Source of the DNA: Macrostomum lignano
Taxonomy: Eukaryota
DNA: 64,000 nucleotides
Direction: 5' to 3'
Assembly: GCA_002269645.1 (NCBI GenBank)
Contig: NIVC01000178.1
Location: forward strand, 62,001-126,000
The notes beneath the pieces are model-generated. The model was given only the letters and a program-made list of their open reading frames with translations, was not told the origin of the DNA and did no database searches. Below, piece by piece: positions 1,389 through 16,595 of this stretch. Position 1 is the first letter of the stretch. Each line of letters opens with the position of its first letter. A program made the position numbers and the translations under genes.

Positions 1389-3143
1389 GAATTCCCATCA
1401 GCCGTGACACGCTTCGAATGGGCAGACGAGGCTCCTTCTCGGCGTTGATGTGTCACTTCGAGTTTGAACGGCACATGGGGTATTTTCTACTGCAGGTGAG
1501 TAGTTGATGAAAATGAGTGGAAGTCTGGTGACAGCTCAGACTCAAGGTGCAACGAACAAAACGCACATAAAACTCATGTACTCAGCGGTGCTTTCGGCAA
1601 GCTAAAGGTTCCCAAAGCCTGCAGAGTTTGACGATGCATTGGATCGCTAAAGTGGCCGTGAGCCGAGATACAACTTGCGCGAAATTTATCAGGAATATTG
1701 GAATAGGCGCTCCCAAACTCTACTATCGTCCACTTGAATATTACCGGGTAAATCTCGTTTCTTGGAATCTCATTTCGTTGCCAGTTTTGGATTGGAAAAC
1801 CGACAAACTGCACGCGCGCGGCGAGACAGCTTAATCCAGTGAATTTTATTCCATCTAGTTAAAATTCAGACTCCTAGATCCCTGCTTCATTCTCCTGTTG
1901 AAATGAAATGAGAGCCACATGGCGTCCAGCATGCAGCAGGAGAAATCTTTCCTGTCAGCGACCCAGATTAGCACCGAATCCCTCTTCTTTTCCAGCTGCC
2001 TCGAGAGCTGCAGGCCGATGAAGTGAATTAAGCGAAATAGTCCTTGGGGGGGGACTGTCATCGGACGGAAGCTCATTAAATCTGTGCTGATGGAGTCACC
2101 ACTAAATAACGCTATACATGAAAATGGCCTGGACGAAATTCTAGTGCCCTAGGTGCTACTTCAGCAGTAGAAGCTGACGGATCCATCTTAACTTGCATAC
2201 GTCGCCATATTTATAATTGTTTAATTCAAGCTCATTAAGCATGCATGCGAAGGTGACTCTTACTTCGGCTGTCATGGCTGCAAGGATGAGGAGAGAAAGG
2301 GAAGAGAGGAGAGGGGAGAGGAGAAAAAGAGATCTGAGAAGAGATATAAACCTTGTGCGCCAGCCGGATTGTTATTATGATATTGTTCACAAACCCGAGG
2401 GCCGGATAAAGAGGGGCCGCATGTGGCCTGAGGGTCGAAGTTTGCCAACCCCTGGGTTAACCAAACTAGGCCATGGTTAAATGGTCTCAAAAAGAAACTT
2501 CGCAAAAGAATTCGAAACAATCGCTGAATCGCTGACCTTGCAGCTGTACCTGCCCTGCAGTCTGCTCGTAGTTCTTAGCTGGGTCGGATTCTGGATCAAT
2601 CGGGAAGCTACATCTGATCGAATCGCATTGAGCATCACTACAGTGCTCACGATGACCTTCCTTGGCATGGACAACCGGCAGGACCTGCCCAGGGTCAGCT
2701 ACGGGACCGCTCTGGACTGGTACGTCGGCATGTGCTTCGCTCAGATCCTCGCCACCATCATTGAGTTCGCCTCTGTGCACTACTTCACCAAGCACGGCAG
2801 CGGAGAGACTCACGTCACCCTGGAGACCGACGGCGCTCCTGAGAACGGCGGCCTTCGCTACGGACAGGCGACGCCACGGATGCAGCGGCCGCAGCCTCCT
2901 CAGCTGCCCGACCTCCGAGCTGCTGCTCAGGTCGCTGACAGGCCGCCAAGTCACGACAGCTGTCCGTACGCCTTTCTCAACTGCATCAAGGGCAGCTCAA
3001 AGTACAAAGAGCTCAAGCTGATGCGCTCGACAAAGACTGTCAACTCGGTTAGCAGGATAGATGAGATCTCCAAGATTCTTTTTCCAGCGCTGTTCGCCCT
3101 GTTTAACCTGGGGTACTGGACCCTGTACCTGAAGGTGCTGTGA
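1389..3143 (+). CDS. GABA-A/Cys-loop receptor subunit, GRD/CG8916-like, copy A (partial: exon 2 1389-1495, exon 3 2544-3143; exon 1 is upstream of the window)
   Basis: Exon 1389-1495 (CAG|, 107 bp, ends CAG|GTGAG) reads [35 protein letters not shown] (loop C to pre-M1). Exon 2544-3143 reads [53 protein letters not shown]...[27 protein letters not shown] (TM1-TM4). Splice phases match copy B. The GRD-type call rests on recalled family motifs. Confidence 0.92.
2395..2454. mobile_element. Right end of a hAT (Charlie-like) non-autonomous element remnant in intron 2 of copy A
   Basis: GGGCCGGATAAA...GGCCGCATGTGGCC...GTTTGCCAACCCCTG. The terminal 15 bp (reverse complement CAGGGGTTGGCAAAC) match the typical hAT/Charlie TIR. 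No left TIR was seen. Confidence 0.55.
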
Positions 3144-4050
3144 CTGGAGTGTGCTGTGCTCAACCTGGGGTACTGGACTCTGTACCTGAAGGTGCTGTGA
3201 CTGGAGTGTGCTGTGCTCAACCTGGGATACTGGACCCTGTACCTGAAGGTGCTGTGACTGGAGTGTGCTGTGCTCAACCTGGGATACTGGACCCTGTACC
3301 TGAAGGTGCTGTGACTGGAGTGTGCTGTGCTCAACCTGGGATACTGGACCCTGTACCTGAAGGTGCTGTGACTGGAGTGTGCTGTGCTCAACCTGGGGTA
3401 CTGGACCCTGTACCTGAAGGTGCTGTGACCGAAGTGTGCTGTGCTCAACCTGGGATACTGGACTCTGTACCTGAAGGTGCTGTGACTGGAGTGTGCTGTG
3501 CTCAACCTGGGGTACTGGACCCTGTACCTGAAGGTGCTGTGACTGGAGTGTGCTGTGCTCAACCTGAGGTACTGGACTCTGTACCTGAAGGTGCTGTGAC
3601 TGGAGTGTGCTGTGCTCAACCTGGGATACTGGACTCTGTACCTGAAGGTGCTGTGACTGAAGTGTGCTGTGCTCAACCTGGGGTACTGGACCCTGTACCT
3701 GAAGGTGCTGTGACTGGAGTGTGCTGTGCTCAACCTGGGGTACTGGATGCTGTACCTGAAGGTGCTGTGACTGGAGTGTGCTGTTTTCAACCTGGGGTAC
3801 TGGATGCTGTACCTGAAGGTGCTGTGACTGAAGTGTGCTGTGCTCAACCTGGGGTACTGGACCCTGTACCTGAAGGTGCTGTGACTGGAGTGTGCTGTGC
3901 TCAACCTGGGGTACTGGATGCTGTACCTGAAGGTGCTGTGACTGGAGTGTGCTGTTTTCAACCTGGGGTACTGGATGCTGTACCTGAAGGTGCTGTGACT
4001 GAAGTGTGCTGTATTCAACCTGTGTGGGGTACTGGACTCTGTACCTGAAG
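3105..4050 (+). repeat. 57-bp tandem array (about 16 units) built from the last 12 codons, stop codon and 18 nt of 3'UTR of receptor copy A
   Basis: Unit AACCTGGGGTACTGGACCCTGTACCTGAAGGTGCTGTGACTGGAGTGTGCTGTGCTC. The first unit is the true coding end ([12 protein letters not shown]). Confidence 0.95.
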
Positions 4051-15900: not shown

Positions 15901-16595
15901 AAGCACAGCACAGCTGACTCACTGCGCAAGTCGAACTGGGACAGCAGCAGGTCTTTGTTCAGCTGAATCGACTCATCGCCTTTGCTCCACTCGTACACCA
16001 CATCTGCCTCTGTGTAGCCGTGACTGCTCACCACCAACGGACACACCTGGGTGTCCATGGGGAACTTGAGCAGATTCATGGGACAATTGGCCTTGATGGT
16101 GAGTCTCATTGAGTAGAGAATGTGCCCGGTGCTGTTAATCCTGAAGAGTACATTCGGAGACGTGATGTTGTGCAAGTACGAGCCCATGCCGTTCACAAAG
16201 TACGTGTCCGGCTTCCAGATGTCTCTGAGCATTTTCTCGTTCAGCTGCAGGTGCGAAAAGTTGTGATGAGTTGGAAAAGTGAGCCTGACGTCCATCCACT
16301 CCTGCCTGAAGTAGCAGTCGAATGAGAATATCATGGACTTCTCAGAGATGGGACCGACGCTCCTGATGTTCATGTTGATGCGCACAGTAACCGGCTGCGC
16401 GTCAAAGTCGGGCCTGAGGTTCTTGTCGTAGTTGTCCAGCAGTCTGTTGAGCGTCTCGGTGATGTTCTTTGTCATCTCGGTGTGGTTGACTCCGGCTGTG
16501 TACAGCATGGCTGAGCAGGGGCTGCCGATCGGGAGGGCGAGAATGATGGCGAGGCACACGAGCCAGGGCTGGAGACTGCCTAAAGTCAGCGGCAT
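6870..16595 (-). CDS. GABA-A/Cys-loop receptor subunit, GRD/CG8916-like, copy B (complete, 459 aa; exons 16595-15923, 14429-14323, 7469-6870)
   Basis: Signal peptide; [13 protein letters not shown]; WKPDTYF; Cys-loop [15 protein letters not shown]; donor A|GTGAGT. The 107-bp exon 2 reads [36 protein letters not shown] and the 600-bp exon 3 encodes TM1-TM4. 673+107+600=1380 nt in frame, all introns GT-AG. Confidence 0.95.
7490..7716. repeat. (GATA)n microsatellite at the 3' end of intron 2 of copy B
   Basis: Direct TAGA/GATA run ending about 20 bp from the acceptor. Confidence 0.95.
8783..10018 (+). CDS. Penelope-like RT C-terminal half, Cys-rich linker and GIY-YIG endonuclease (5'-truncated, uninterrupted)
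   Basis: [42 protein letters not shown] and YFKPTD are PLE RT motifs. Linker [21 protein letters not shown]...YVGET...RMLAH is the GIY-YIG domain. Confidence 0.92.
   Translation: MKLNLERNDFEFDGRYFLQVKGTAMGKSFAPSYSNIFMGYWEQRGLETSPQKPSLWLRYIDDVFGVWRGTEAELVQFHQHLDALDPNIRLQLSYSSTEVNFLDTIVFWDREGDSKSLATRVYFKPTDSRVLIHRGSFHPKRTLRGVVKSQLLRYARWCSRMADFDAACTGLMSNLVQHQGYSRRFLRTIKYDVLTELGFYPTRRWEFGFLPCNSARLCKCCQAHARFTSVCPGSAATTVQLIISQWIDCNATNAIYAVFCRRCDHTVYVGETANSIRGRMLAHIGDIRHTRDTPVARHFTSGGHNLTDFAFTGIWTRDGTGPRADERRQRQEAKFIEVLRTRVPHGANELAGVLHNPAIPLILPHCATSDALAAKVKDRVIRHCETPVLPAYTKGRSLRTLLCHSRLDPAN
10438..10477 (+). ncRNA. Minimal type-I hammerhead ribozyme in the PLE terminal repeat
   Basis: AGCC-CUGACGA-A-GAAAUU(UAAU)AAUUUC-GAAA-UA-UC-GGCU: conserved core, 6-bp helix II, 4-bp helix I (AGCC/GGCU), palindromic AUAU in place of helix III. 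Predicted cleavage after C10473. Confidence 0.75.
11860..12390. repeat. Degenerate pyrimidine-rich tandem repeat (CATTCCCTCTCGAATTCCC-like)
   Basis: Recurring TTCCCTCTCGAATTCCC units inside intron 2 of copy B. Confidence 0.85.
12820..13950. repeat. 12-bp purine-rich minisatellite (GAGAGGGTGAAACAGAGT family)
   Basis: Repeated GAGAGGGTGAAAC(A/T)GAG units with longer composite variants. It accounts for the ORFs at 12745-13962. Confidence 0.9.
14533..15838. repeat. 45-bp minisatellite filling intron 1 of receptor copy B
   Basis: CACCATCAACTCAAAGACACGGAAGCAACTCAAGCAGAGAAGCCA units, more variable than the copy at 1-1304. Confidence 0.95.

What the first reader, a model, noticed from the sequence alone, without database searches (positions are those of the whole stretch)
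1389..16595. Tail-to-tail inverted pair of GRD-like GABA receptor subunits: diversified ligand loop, shared channel and tail
Seen: two paralogues with the same exon structure (identical 107-bp exon 2 and 600-bp exon 3, same phases, same intron-1 minisatellite) converge on a ~540-bp spacer. The part nearest the symmetry axis is near-identical while the distal parts have diverged strongly. Inference: this looks like a palindrome-maintained receptor locus, in which arm-to-arm conversion keeps TM2-TM4 and the cytoplasmic loop uniform while the extracellular ligand domain differentiates. That would give two ligand specificities on one channel/trafficking module. I do not recall this arrangement being described for invertebrate Cys-loop receptors.
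Basis: partly seen in the sequence, partly recalled or inferred. Interest (0 to 1): 0.75.

Follow-up and report, generated by a model that had tools for sequence, protein, structure and literature searches.

The report
Inverted GABA-receptor gene pair, mosaic homogenisation
Two neighbouring flatworm GABA-receptor-like genes that face each other have been kept almost identical everywhere except one old, diverged segment (loop C to the first membrane helix), a tidy but ordinary case of gene conversion between inverted duplicates.

Summary
The structure is real. The window matches Macrostomum lignano. Two intact-looking Cys-loop receptor genes of the GABA-A alpha-like/GRD group lie tail to tail. 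Copy A (+) has exon 2 at 1389-1495 and exon 3 at 2544-3143; its exon 1 is off-window. Copy B (-) has exons at 16595-15923, 14429-14323 and 7469-6870. Exon lengths (107 and 600 bp), phases and splice sites match, and a 543-bp unique spacer separates two inverted 57-bp minisatellite arrays.

Divergence switches abruptly inside exon 3. Exon 2 plus the first 96 nt of exon 3 differ at 61 of 203 nt, with synonymous sites saturated. The next 642 bp differ at 2 positions.

UniProt M. lignano gene models show that copy A's exon 1, the bulk of the ligand-binding domain, equals copy B's apart from the first 11 residues. The divergence is therefore an island (loop C, beta10, pre-M1, M1, start of M2, intron 2) between two homogenised blocks.

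Best explanation: non-allelic gene conversion between old inverted paralogues. Whether selection protects the island is untested. This is a new member of a known kind, of modest interest.

The parts
1..1304 (+). Copy A, intron 1: 45-bp minisatellite (about 29 units, cut by the window start). It is the same unit family as in copy B.
   Evidence: TRF; unit map; pattern search finds units only here and at 14548-15804.
1389..1495 (+). Copy A exon 2 (107 bp, starts in phase 1). It encodes loop C, beta10 and pre-M1 ([35 protein letters not shown]). Part of the divergent island.
   Evidence: Sequence with caacag|GA and CAG|gtgagt; tblastn; 100% match to A0A1I8FV63.
1496..2543 (+). Copy A intron 2 (1048 bp). 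It cannot be aligned with copy B's intron 2.
   Evidence: blastn of A against B finds no match in 1340-2536.
2544..3143 (+). Copy A exon 3 (600 bp including the TGA stop): M1, M2, M3, cytoplasmic loop, M4.
   Evidence: ORF and acceptor ttgcag|CT; Pfam Neur_chan_memb on the paralogue.
2640..3281 (+). Copy A side of the collinear near-identical tract (642 bp, 2 mismatches at 2950 and 3179). It runs from M2 position 6' through the stop codon into the first three minisatellite units.
   Evidence: In-register mismatch list; codon table; dS = 0.
3105..4051 (+). Copy A 57-bp minisatellite (16.5 units). It starts inside the CDS, and each unit repeats the last 12 codons plus the stop ([12 protein letters not shown]). 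It forms the presumed 3' UTR.
   Evidence: TRF; unit map; tblastn hits of residues 449-460 throughout the arrays.
4052..4594 (.). Unique AT-rich spacer (543 bp) between the arrays. AATAAA occurs at 4159-4164 (+) and at 4551-4546 (-); these are consensus matches only.
   Evidence: Sequence; no internal repeat of note.
4595..6908 (-). Copy B 57-bp minisatellite (about 40 units). It contains an exact 883-bp internal duplication (4921-5803 = 5780-6662). Unit order is shared with copy A only for the first three units next to the stop codon.
   Evidence: TRF; unit map; shift-859 comparison.
6870..7469 (-). Copy B exon 3 (600 bp including the stop).
   Evidence: Alignment A1; translation.
6732..7373 (-). 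Copy B side of the near-identical tract.
7470..14322 (-). Copy B intron 2 (6.85 kb). Contents: (ATAG)n, two (CT)n arrays flanking a retroelement-like ORF (8840-10018, + strand), and 23-bp and 18-bp minisatellites.
   Evidence: TRF; ORF list; direct repeats; no Pfam hit for the ORF.
14323..14429 (-). Copy B exon 2 (107 bp, starts in phase 1): [35 protein letters not shown]. It shares 20 of 36 residues with copy A.
   Evidence: tblastn; sequence with ccccag|AG and CAG|gtgagt; codon table.
14530..15836 (-). Copy B intron-1 45-bp minisatellite (29 units, more heterogeneous than copy A's).
15923..16595 (-). Copy B exon 1 (673 bp): signal peptide and most of the ligand-binding domain, including the Cys-loop [15 protein letters not shown].
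   Evidence: ORF; donor CGCA|gtgagt; Pfam Neur_chan_LBD at residues 47-254.

Best explanation
A and B are two functional, old paralogues of a GABA-A alpha-like (GRD-group) Cys-loop receptor subunit in Macrostomum lignano. They lie tail to tail.

Non-allelic (interlocus) gene conversion between the inverted copies has recently homogenised two blocks:
- Block (i) runs from about codon 6-12 of exon 1 through the 5' part of intron 1 and its 45-bp minisatellite.
- Block (ii) runs from M2 position 6' through M3, the cytoplasmic loop, M4 and the stop codon into the 57-bp minisatellite that grew out of the gene's own 3' end.

Between the blocks an unconverted island keeps the old divergence. It comprises the 3' end of intron 1, exon 2 (loop C, beta10, pre-M1), intron 2 and the first 96 nt of exon 3 (M1, the M1-M2 linker and the start of M2). 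The 5' flanks and the first 11 codons also differ, so each copy should have its own promoter.

Shown: the anatomy, the abrupt switch in divergence, and purifying selection on both versions of the island.
Inferred: that conversion, rather than another homogenising event, produced the two blocks.
Inferred from other people's gene models, not from this window: the 5' block.
Open: whether the island persists because selection favours two loop-C/M1 variants, or only because the unalignable introns and a 5.8-kb difference in intron 2 length stop heteroduplex extension.
For: - Gene models, identical exon lengths and phases, canonical splice sites.
- B is a complete 459-aa protein with Neur_chan_LBD and Neur_chan_memb domains.
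- Codons 1-68 of exon 2+3 differ at 43 codons. Over those codons pS = 0.73 (saturated). pN is 0.27 in exon 2 and 0.03 in M1. Codons 69-235 carry one nonsynonymous difference, with dS = 0.
- The switch falls inside uninterrupted coding sequence. Mismatches occur at A 2635, 2636 and 2639, then none until 2950. Fisher p = 2.6e-35.
- The single 3' difference (S/N) is not fixed: the B-type model A0A1I8HW25 has S.
- A-type models A0A1I8FV63, A0A1I8GI26 and A0A1I8IYR8 join an exon 1 about 99% identical to B's to A-specific intron and exon sequence. Their read-through of the first ~110 nt of intron 1 differs from B at 2 of 38 translated residues.
- Segment incongruence. In exon 1 A equals B, and both are about 74% identical to paralogue C (A0A1I8I9C2). 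In exon 2 the identities are A-B 20/36, B-C 24/36 and A-C 20/36.
- GC3 is 0.78-0.80 in the homogenised parts against 0.60-0.68 in the island. This agrees with GC-biased conversion, but the sample is small.
- Mosaic conversion between closely linked inverted paralogues is well documented (PMC3199776).
Against: - Copy A's exon 1 is outside the window, so the 5' block rests on protein-level models from another assembly. Its synonymous divergence is unknown.
- No second species or population sample was available, so conversion is inferred from pattern only.
- The minisatellite arrays are not collinear beyond three units. The 'arms' are therefore short (642 bp of unique sequence), and the arrays may turn over independently.
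- An exact 883-bp duplication inside the B array warns that array assembly may be imperfect.
- Polishing of a repeat-rich assembly can exaggerate identity between paralogues.
Confidence: 0.72

Rival explanations
1. This is a palindrome kept uniform by arm-to-arm conversion that fades with distance from the axis. The channel and tail stay shared while the extracellular ligand-binding domain as a whole differentiates into two ligand specificities.
For: - Near-identity next to the axis and an abrupt loss of identity further out.
- A short unique spacer.
- Exon 2 encodes loop C.
Against: - Identity returns distal to the island: in the intron-1 arrays and in exon 1, according to the A-type UniProt models.
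- Only 36 + 2 residues of the mature protein differ, not the whole domain.
- The subunit is alpha-like, and alpha loop C is not part of the canonical beta+/alpha- agonist site (established knowledge).
Confidence: 0.08
2. A recent inverted duplication of the whole gene (about codon 6 to the end of the 3' array). Afterwards the central cassette of one copy (exon 2, intron 2, M1) was replaced by conversion or recombination from a third, more distant paralogue elsewhere in the genome.
For: - It gives the same mosaic pattern.
- M. lignano carries several GRD-like paralogues.
- Copy A's exon 2 is the outlier: A-B and A-C are both 20/36, while B-C is 24/36.
Against: - No annotated M. lignano protein among the best 120 hits carries an A-like or B-like exon 2 joined to different flanks.
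- The replacement would have to preserve exon length and phase, and would have to end inside M2 and at the edge of the intron-1 array.
- It needs one more event and an unseen donor.
Confidence: 0.12
3. Assembly artefact. One arm is a mis-join, a fold-back chimera or a collapsed or duplicated haplotype, and the near-identity is produced by assembly or polishing.
For: - The genome is extremely rich in minisatellites (49 TRF rows in 64 kb).
- There is an exact 883-bp duplication inside the B array.
- The window's copy B differs at two residues from the UniProt B-type model. Several near-identical loci or haplotypes therefore exist.
Against: - The arms are asymmetric. The arrays have 16.5 against 40 units with different unit order, intron 2 is 1.0 against 6.9 kb, and the exon 2 versions differ. 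The arms are separated by a unique 543-bp spacer. A fold-back chimera would be symmetric.
- Both A-type and B-type genes exist as separate UniProt models.
- A0A1I8FV63 runs from copy A's exon 3 straight into the antisense translation of an exon 3. This indicates the same tail-to-tail layout in the assembly behind that model (one search compared with the antisense ORFs).
Confidence: 0.06

Closest known systems
Mosaic interlocus gene conversion between closely linked inverted paralogues. Examples listed in PMC3199776: Drosophila Hsp70, alpha-amylase and trypsin, and Capitella Dlxa/Dlxb tail-to-tail.
   Same: - Two linked genes in inverted orientation.
- Tracts of unexpectedly high nucleotide identity, including synonymous sites.
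- A mosaic of converted and unconverted segments within one gene.
   Different: - The gene is a Cys-loop receptor subunit in a flatworm.
- Both converted blocks end in, or run into, a minisatellite array.
- The unconverted part is one compact functional cassette (loop C to M1).
Human RHD/RHCE. Innan 2003, PNAS 100:8793 (reference cited in PMC3924837; the paper itself was not read here). Its content, an exon-7 divergence peak kept by selection against conversion, is recalled from my own knowledge.
   Same: Inverted, closely linked paralogues are homogenised by conversion, and a localised region of high divergence persists between homogenised flanks.
   Different: - For RH, population data and a formal model support selection. 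No polymorphism data exist here, so selection on the island is untested.
- The RH genes are separated by about 30 kb containing another gene (own knowledge).
Y-chromosome-type palindromes with arm-to-arm gene conversion (reviewed in PMC3403216)
   Same: Inverted arms around a short unique spacer. The arms are near-identical, and this is attributed to intrachromosomal conversion.
   Different: - The unique near-identical arm here is only 642 bp, against kilobases to megabases.
- The arms are asymmetric.
- Homology is interrupted by an old island and then resumes, instead of ending at an outer boundary.
Modular diversification of invertebrate GABA-receptor subunits by alternative splicing. Examples: C. 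elegans unc-49, one gene giving UNC-49A, B and C (PMC3990606), with a shared N-terminus and alternative C-terminal halves (my own knowledge of Bamber et al. 1999); and insect RDL alternative exons 3 and 6 (own knowledge).
   Same: The outcome at the protein level: subunits that share most of their sequence and differ in one cassette of the ligand-binding or gating region.
   Different: Here there are two separate genes on opposite strands with separate 5' flanks, and the shared parts are kept alike by homogenisation of DNA, not by splicing. No alternative exon was found within either gene.
Arthropod GRD / 8916 / HoCas alpha-like GABA receptor subunits. GRD and LCCH3 together form cation-selective GABA-gated channels (PMC11275251).
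   Same: - Best named hits are 'GABA receptor alpha-like' and GRD, at 43-52% identity.
- The best solved structure is GABA-A alpha1.
- The stretch before M2 reads S-D-R. GRD has A-D-R and anion channels have P-A-R.
   Different: - This is a flatworm gene with three exons.
- Orthology to one particular arthropod clade was not tested.
- The ligand, the partner subunit and the ion selectivity are unknown.

Membership tests
Cys-loop (pentameric) ligand-gated ion channel superfamily | N-terminal ligand-binding domain plus transmembrane channel domain | tested here: met
   Pfam PF02931 (E = 6e-48, residues 47-254) and PF02932 (E = 6.5e-33) on copy B.
Cys-loop (pentameric) ligand-gated ion channel superfamily | Signature disulphide loop, C-x13-C | tested here: met
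   [15 protein letters not shown] in copy B's exon 1. It aligns to the alpha1 Cys-loop.
Cys-loop (pentameric) ligand-gated ion channel superfamily | Four transmembrane helices, with M4 at the C-terminus | tested here: met
   M1-M3 and M4 align to human GABA-A alpha1 in two stretches. Both copies have an intact exon 3.
GABA-A alpha-like / GRD group | Closest relatives are alpha-type or GRD subunits rather than beta/LCCH3, RDL, GluCl or glycine receptors | tested here: met
   Named top hits are alpha-like or GRD. The PDB ranking puts alpha1-6 (E = 1e-95 to 1e-86) ahead of beta, gamma and glycine receptor chains.
GABA-A alpha-like / GRD group | Stretch before M2 reads A/S-D-R instead of the anion-channel P-A-R | tested here: met
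   REATSDR in A and B against REATADR in Nasonia and Apis GRD. Human alpha1 has PAR at this position.
GABA-A alpha-like / GRD group | Orthology to GRD as opposed to the 8916 or HoCas clades, by phylogeny | not tested
   No labelled 8916 or HoCas references were retrieved. The best arthropod hits are chelicerate and collembolan alpha-like proteins, not insect GRD.
GABA-A alpha-like / GRD group | Gated by GABA; forms a cation channel with an LCCH3-like partner | not testable with these tools
   Needs heterologous expression and electrophysiology.
Palindrome with arm-to-arm gene conversion | Inverted arms of very high identity around a short unique spacer | tested here: met
   642 bp at 99.7% identity plus inverted arrays; 543-bp spacer.
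Palindrome with arm-to-arm gene conversion | Identity continuous along the arms up to one outer boundary | tested here: not met
   The arrays are not collinear beyond three units. An old island interrupts homology, which then resumes in the intron-1 arrays and in exon 1.
Interlocus gene conversion mosaic with a divergence island | Abrupt junction between a tract with dS near 0 and a tract with saturated dS within continuous coding sequence | tested here: met
Interlocus gene conversion mosaic with a divergence island | Different segments give different paralogue relationships | tested here: inconclusive
   In exon 1 A equals B, and both are far from paralogue C. In exon 2 B is nearer to C (24/36) than to A (20/36). 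The comparison is at protein level on a short segment, and no tree was built.
Interlocus gene conversion mosaic with a divergence island | Island maintained by selection against conversion | tested here: inconclusive
   Both island versions are under purifying selection (pN/pS about 0.34 in exon 2 and 0.04 in M1). No polymorphism or cross-species data were available, and heterology of intron 2 is an equally good barrier.
Cassette diversification by alternative splicing (unc-49 / RDL type) | Alternative exons within one transcription unit | tested here: not met
   The two exon 2 versions lie on opposite strands about 13 kb apart. tblastn finds no further copy of exon 2 in the window.

The most novel reading that the evidence does not exclude
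The locus is a DNA-level equivalent of mutually exclusive splicing. Two separately promoted genes are held identical by ongoing conversion across the whole subunit. Selection keeps one cassette (the loop-C hairpin, beta10, pre-M1 and M1) in two old versions. This would give two receptor subunits that share assembly, pore and trafficking determinants but differ in gating or in an interface-specific ligand or modulator site. The gene-derived minisatellites next to both converted blocks would act as the initiators of conversion.
Probability: 0.25. Interest if true: 0.55.

Novelty: new member of a known kind. Interest (0 to 1): 0.3.

Why it matters
If the island is kept by selection, the pair is a natural domain-swap experiment. 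The two subunits differ only in loop C, beta10 and M1 (about 18 residues in exon 2 and 2 in M2) and in their promoters. That would let one assign a function to the loop-C hairpin of an alpha-like/GRD-type subunit in a flatworm, a group whose Cys-loop receptors are drug targets in parasitic relatives.

It is also a clean case for studying how conversion tracts end. One boundary lies inside M2 and one at the edge of a minisatellite.

For annotation it carries a warning. All six UniProt models of this locus examined here are wrong in some way: they skip exon 2, read through introns, or run into the antisense of the partner gene.

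Tried and rejected
- I looked for copy A's exon 1 DNA. Exact-product look-ups of the two longest window ORFs (A exon 3, B exon 1) found nothing on record. The UniProt models have no contig attached. The 5' block is therefore supported only at protein level.
- I tested whether the palindrome extends outward. 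The neighbouring Cys-loop gene fused upstream of A-type exon 1 in A0A1I8IYR8 has no counterpart upstream of copy B. B's upstream neighbour is the 3' end of an aquarius-like gene. Homology stops near the start codon.
- I tested whether the arrays are collinear between arms. They are not, beyond three units for the 57-bp array and not at all for the 45-bp array. I do not count the arrays as evidence of a long palindrome.
- I considered that the two minisatellites are dispersed repeats inserted independently. Within the window they occur only in these two genes. The 57-bp unit is made of the gene's own last 12 codons, and the intron-1 flank upstream of the 45-bp array is shared. Independent insertion is rejected. 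Dispersed arrays do exist in this genome.
- I considered positive selection on exon 2. pN is below pS and pS is saturated, so nothing can be claimed.
- I tried to name the ORF at 8840-10018. Pfam finds nothing. My reading of it as the C-terminal part of a Penelope-like reverse transcriptase with a GIY-YIG-like motif is by eye and from memory only.
- Literature searches for Macrostomum with gene conversion or with Cys-loop/GABA receptors found no description of this locus.

Full report
**1. What is in the sequence**

The window is eukaryotic and extremely rich in minisatellites (49 TRF rows in 64 kb). A complete three-exon Cys-loop receptor gene, copy B, lies on the minus strand:
- exon 1, 16595-15923 (673 bp)
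- exon 2, 14429-14323 (107 bp)
- exon 3, 7469-6870 (600 bp including the stop)

Copy B gives an uninterrupted 459-aa protein with Pfam Neur_chan_LBD and Neur_chan_memb domains and the C-x13-C loop.

Copy A lies on the plus strand. Its exon 2 is at 1389-1495 (107 bp) and its exon 3 at 2544-3143 (600 bp). Its exon 1 lies upstream of the window, which begins inside intron 1.

All splice sites are AG/GT, and the phases are the same in both copies: exon 2 starts in phase 1 and exon 3 in phase 0. The finding's coordinates, 1389-16595, run exactly from A's exon 2 to B's start codon.

**2. Organism and family**

The best protein hits are UniProt models from Macrostomum lignano (85-92% overall). A's exons 2 and 3 are 100% identical to A0A1I8FV63.

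Outside Macrostomum, the named hits are 'GABA receptor alpha-like' and GRD at 43-52% identity. The best solved structures are GABA-A alpha1 to alpha6, ahead of beta, gamma and glycine receptors.

The stretch before M2 reads S-D-R. GRD has A-D-R and anion channels have P-A-R. Arthropod GRD with LCCH3 forms cation-selective GABA-gated channels (PMC11275251). 'GRD-like' is therefore a fair label at the level of the alpha-like group. Orthology to GRD rather than to the 8916 or HoCas clades was not tested.

**3. The two arms**

Each gene ends in a 57-bp minisatellite that starts inside the CDS, at A 3105. Every unit repeats the last 12 codons, the stop and 18 further bases ([12 protein letters not shown]). 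The array evidently grew out of the gene's own 3' end.

- Copy A has 16.5 units (3105-4051).
- Copy B has about 40 units (4595-6908), including an exact 883-bp internal duplication (4921-5803 = 5780-6662).

The arrays face each other across a unique AT-rich spacer of 543 bp (4052-4594). The spacer carries AATAAA on each strand shortly after each array. These are consensus matches only.

The terminal unit of both arrays carries a 3-nt insertion at the same place. Unit order is shared only for the first three units next to the stop codon.

**4. The switch in divergence**

I compared exon 2 plus exon 3 codon by codon (236 codon positions counting the stop).

| Segment | Codons | Differences | pS | pN |
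|---|---|---|---|---|
| Exon 2 | 1-36 | see total below | 0.80 | 0.27 |
| Exon 3, first 32 codons (M1 to start of M2) | 37-68 | see total below | 0.66 | 0.03 |
| Both together | 1-68 | 43 codons differ | 0.73 (saturated) | 0.16 |
| Rest of exon 3 | 69-235 | 1 nonsynonymous (S/N) | 0 (dS = 0) | 0.003 |

At the nucleotide level the counts are 61 of 203 against 1 of 504 (Fisher p = 2.6e-35).

The junction lies inside continuous coding sequence. Mismatches occur at A 2635, 2636 and 2639, then none until 2950. The collinear near-identical tract is A 2640-3281 against B 7373-6732, 642 bp with 2 mismatches.

The introns flanking exon 2 cannot be aligned. Intron 2 is 1.05 kb in A. In B it is 6.85 kb and holds microsatellites, two further minisatellites and a retroelement-like ORF.

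**5.

Distal to the island, similarity returns. The 45-bp intron-1 minisatellite is the same unit family in both genes. Six unit variants are shared, and the units occur nowhere else in the window.

More importantly, four UniProt models link an exon 1 nearly identical to B's to sequence specific to copy A:
- A0A1I8FV63, linked to A's exon 2, a piece of A's intron 2 and A's exon 3
- A0A1I8GI26, linked to the 3' end of A's intron 2 (NFAKEFET.AESLTLQ) and A's exon 3
- A0A1I8IYR8 and A0A1I8FRT7, linked to A's exon 3

The A-type and B-type exon 1 differ only in the first 11 residues (MLFNSGSLQHP against [11 protein letters not shown]). They also differ at I/N77 and V/A103, but these vary among models of the same type.

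The models that read through the start of intron 1 give [39 protein letters not shown]'s intron gives [38 protein letters not shown]. This is non-coding sequence, so the near-identity holds at the DNA level there.

The single 3' difference, S/N, is S in the B-type model A0A1I8HW25.

The fixed differences between A and B are therefore:
- the 5' flank and the first 11 codons
- an internal island comprising the 3' end of intron 1, exon 2, intron 2 and 96 nt of exon 3

The neighbour fused upstream of A in A0A1I8IYR8 is another Cys-loop gene with a PAR motif. It has no counterpart upstream of B. B's neighbour is the 3' end of an aquarius-like gene. The duplicated or homogenised unit is therefore just the gene.

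**6. What the island encodes**

By alignment to human alpha1, exon 2 corresponds to [35 protein letters not shown]. This is the loop-C hairpin, strand beta10 and the pre-M1 arginine.

A and B share 20 of 36 residues there. Both keep the G-x-F-S core and the RHMGYFLLQ end.

The following 32 codons (M1, the M1-M2 linker and M2 up to position 5') differ almost only at synonymous sites, with two conservative changes (I/V at 1', I/T at 5'). Both versions are therefore old and constrained, and neither looks like a pseudogene.

In exon 2, B is nearer to the next paralogue C (A0A1I8I9C2, 24/36) than to A (20/36). In exon 1, A equals B and both are about 74% identical to C. This incongruence is what conversion predicts, but it rests on a short protein segment.

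**7. Mechanism**

The most economical reading is an old inverted duplication whose copies have been partly re-homogenised by non-allelic gene conversion in two blocks. The island was either never included or was selected against when converted.

Conversion between closely linked inverted paralogues, and mosaic tracts within one gene, are well documented. PMC3199776 lists Hsp70, amylase, trypsin, Y palindromes and Capitella Dlx. For RHD/RHCE I have only the reference (Innan 2003, as cited in PMC3924837); the paper itself was not read.

GC3 is higher in the homogenised parts (0.78-0.80) than in the island (0.60-0.68). This fits GC-biased conversion but is weak evidence.

Both homogenised blocks contain a minisatellite, and the 5' boundary of the island coincides with the inner end of the 45-bp array. 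Whether arrays initiate conversion here is speculation. Minisatellites are everywhere in this genome, and one 15-bp array recurs in inverted orientation 8 kb away with no flank homology.

**8. Rivals**

- A recent whole-gene duplication followed by replacement of the cassette from a third paralogue is possible. It needs an unseen donor, and none of the annotated M. lignano relatives carries a near-identical exon 2.
- An assembly artefact is unlikely. The arms are asymmetric and separated by unique sequence. A-type and B-type models exist independently. A0A1I8FV63 runs from A's exon 3 into the antisense translation of an exon 3, so it reproduces the tail-to-tail layout. The exact 883-bp array duplication should still be checked with long reads.

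**9. Function**

The claim of 'two ligand specificities on one channel module' goes beyond the evidence. In alpha-like subunits loop C lies at the alpha+ interface, not at the beta+/alpha- agonist site. This is established knowledge for GABA-A receptors, and whether it holds for flatworm GRD-like receptors is unknown.

A difference in gating, assembly interface or a modulatory site is as likely as a difference in agonist. The distinct 5' flanks suggest separate regulation.

**10. Verdict**

This is a new, neat member of a known kind of locus. Its interest is modest unless selection on the island or a functional difference is shown.

Noticed in passing
window 3105-4051 and 4595-6908: The 57-bp minisatellite is built from the gene's own 3' end. 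Each unit contains the last 12 codons of M4 plus the stop codon ([12 protein letters not shown]) and 18 nt of 3' flank. The presumed 3' UTRs (about 0.9 and 2.3 kb) are therefore tandem copies of the C-terminal coding sequence. The unit length is a multiple of three.
   Followed up: partly
window 4921-5803 and 5780-6662: An exact 883-bp direct duplication (15 units, no mismatch) lies inside copy B's array. Each block ends in a unit with the 3- to 4-nt insertion otherwise seen only in the terminal units. It is either a very recent higher-order duplication or an assembly error.
   Followed up: partly
window 8840-10018 (+), flanked by (CT)n at 8184-8784 and 10553-11163: A 392-aa ORF lies in copy B's intron 2, antisense to the gene. 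By eye it looks like the C-terminal part of a reverse transcriptase followed by a GIY-YIG-like motif (Penelope-like element). Pfam finds nothing. The flanks 8451-8628 and 11080-11257 are 87% alike.
   Followed up: partly
window 18096-30802 (-): An aquarius-like (intron-binding helicase) gene: Pfam Aquarius_N_1st at 29062-29664 and AAA_12 at the start of the ORF 18096-20432. Its last large ORF carries a long acidic repeat tail ([10 protein letters not shown]-type) that includes a 30-bp coding minisatellite at 19264-19711.
   Followed up: partly
window 42136-42487 and 50569-50917: The same 15-bp minisatellite occurs twice in inverted orientation 8.1 kb apart (98-100% complementary), with no homology in the flanks. 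Dispersed minisatellite families therefore exist in this genome.
   Followed up: yes
window 40680-41129 (+) and 44715-45833 (+): A Ras-family small GTPase exon (Pfam Ras, E = 6e-38). A retroelement ORF with an RNase H domain is flanked by copies of a 31-bp minisatellite (44427-44759 and 45930-46054).
   Followed up: no
UniProt A0A1I8FV63, A0A1I8IYR8, A0A1I8HW25, A0A1I8FRT7, A0A1I8GI26 (not in the window): All public gene models of this locus that I examined are faulty. They skip exon 2, translate intron sequence, fuse the upstream Cys-loop gene, or continue into the antisense strand of the partner gene's exon 3.
   Followed up: yes
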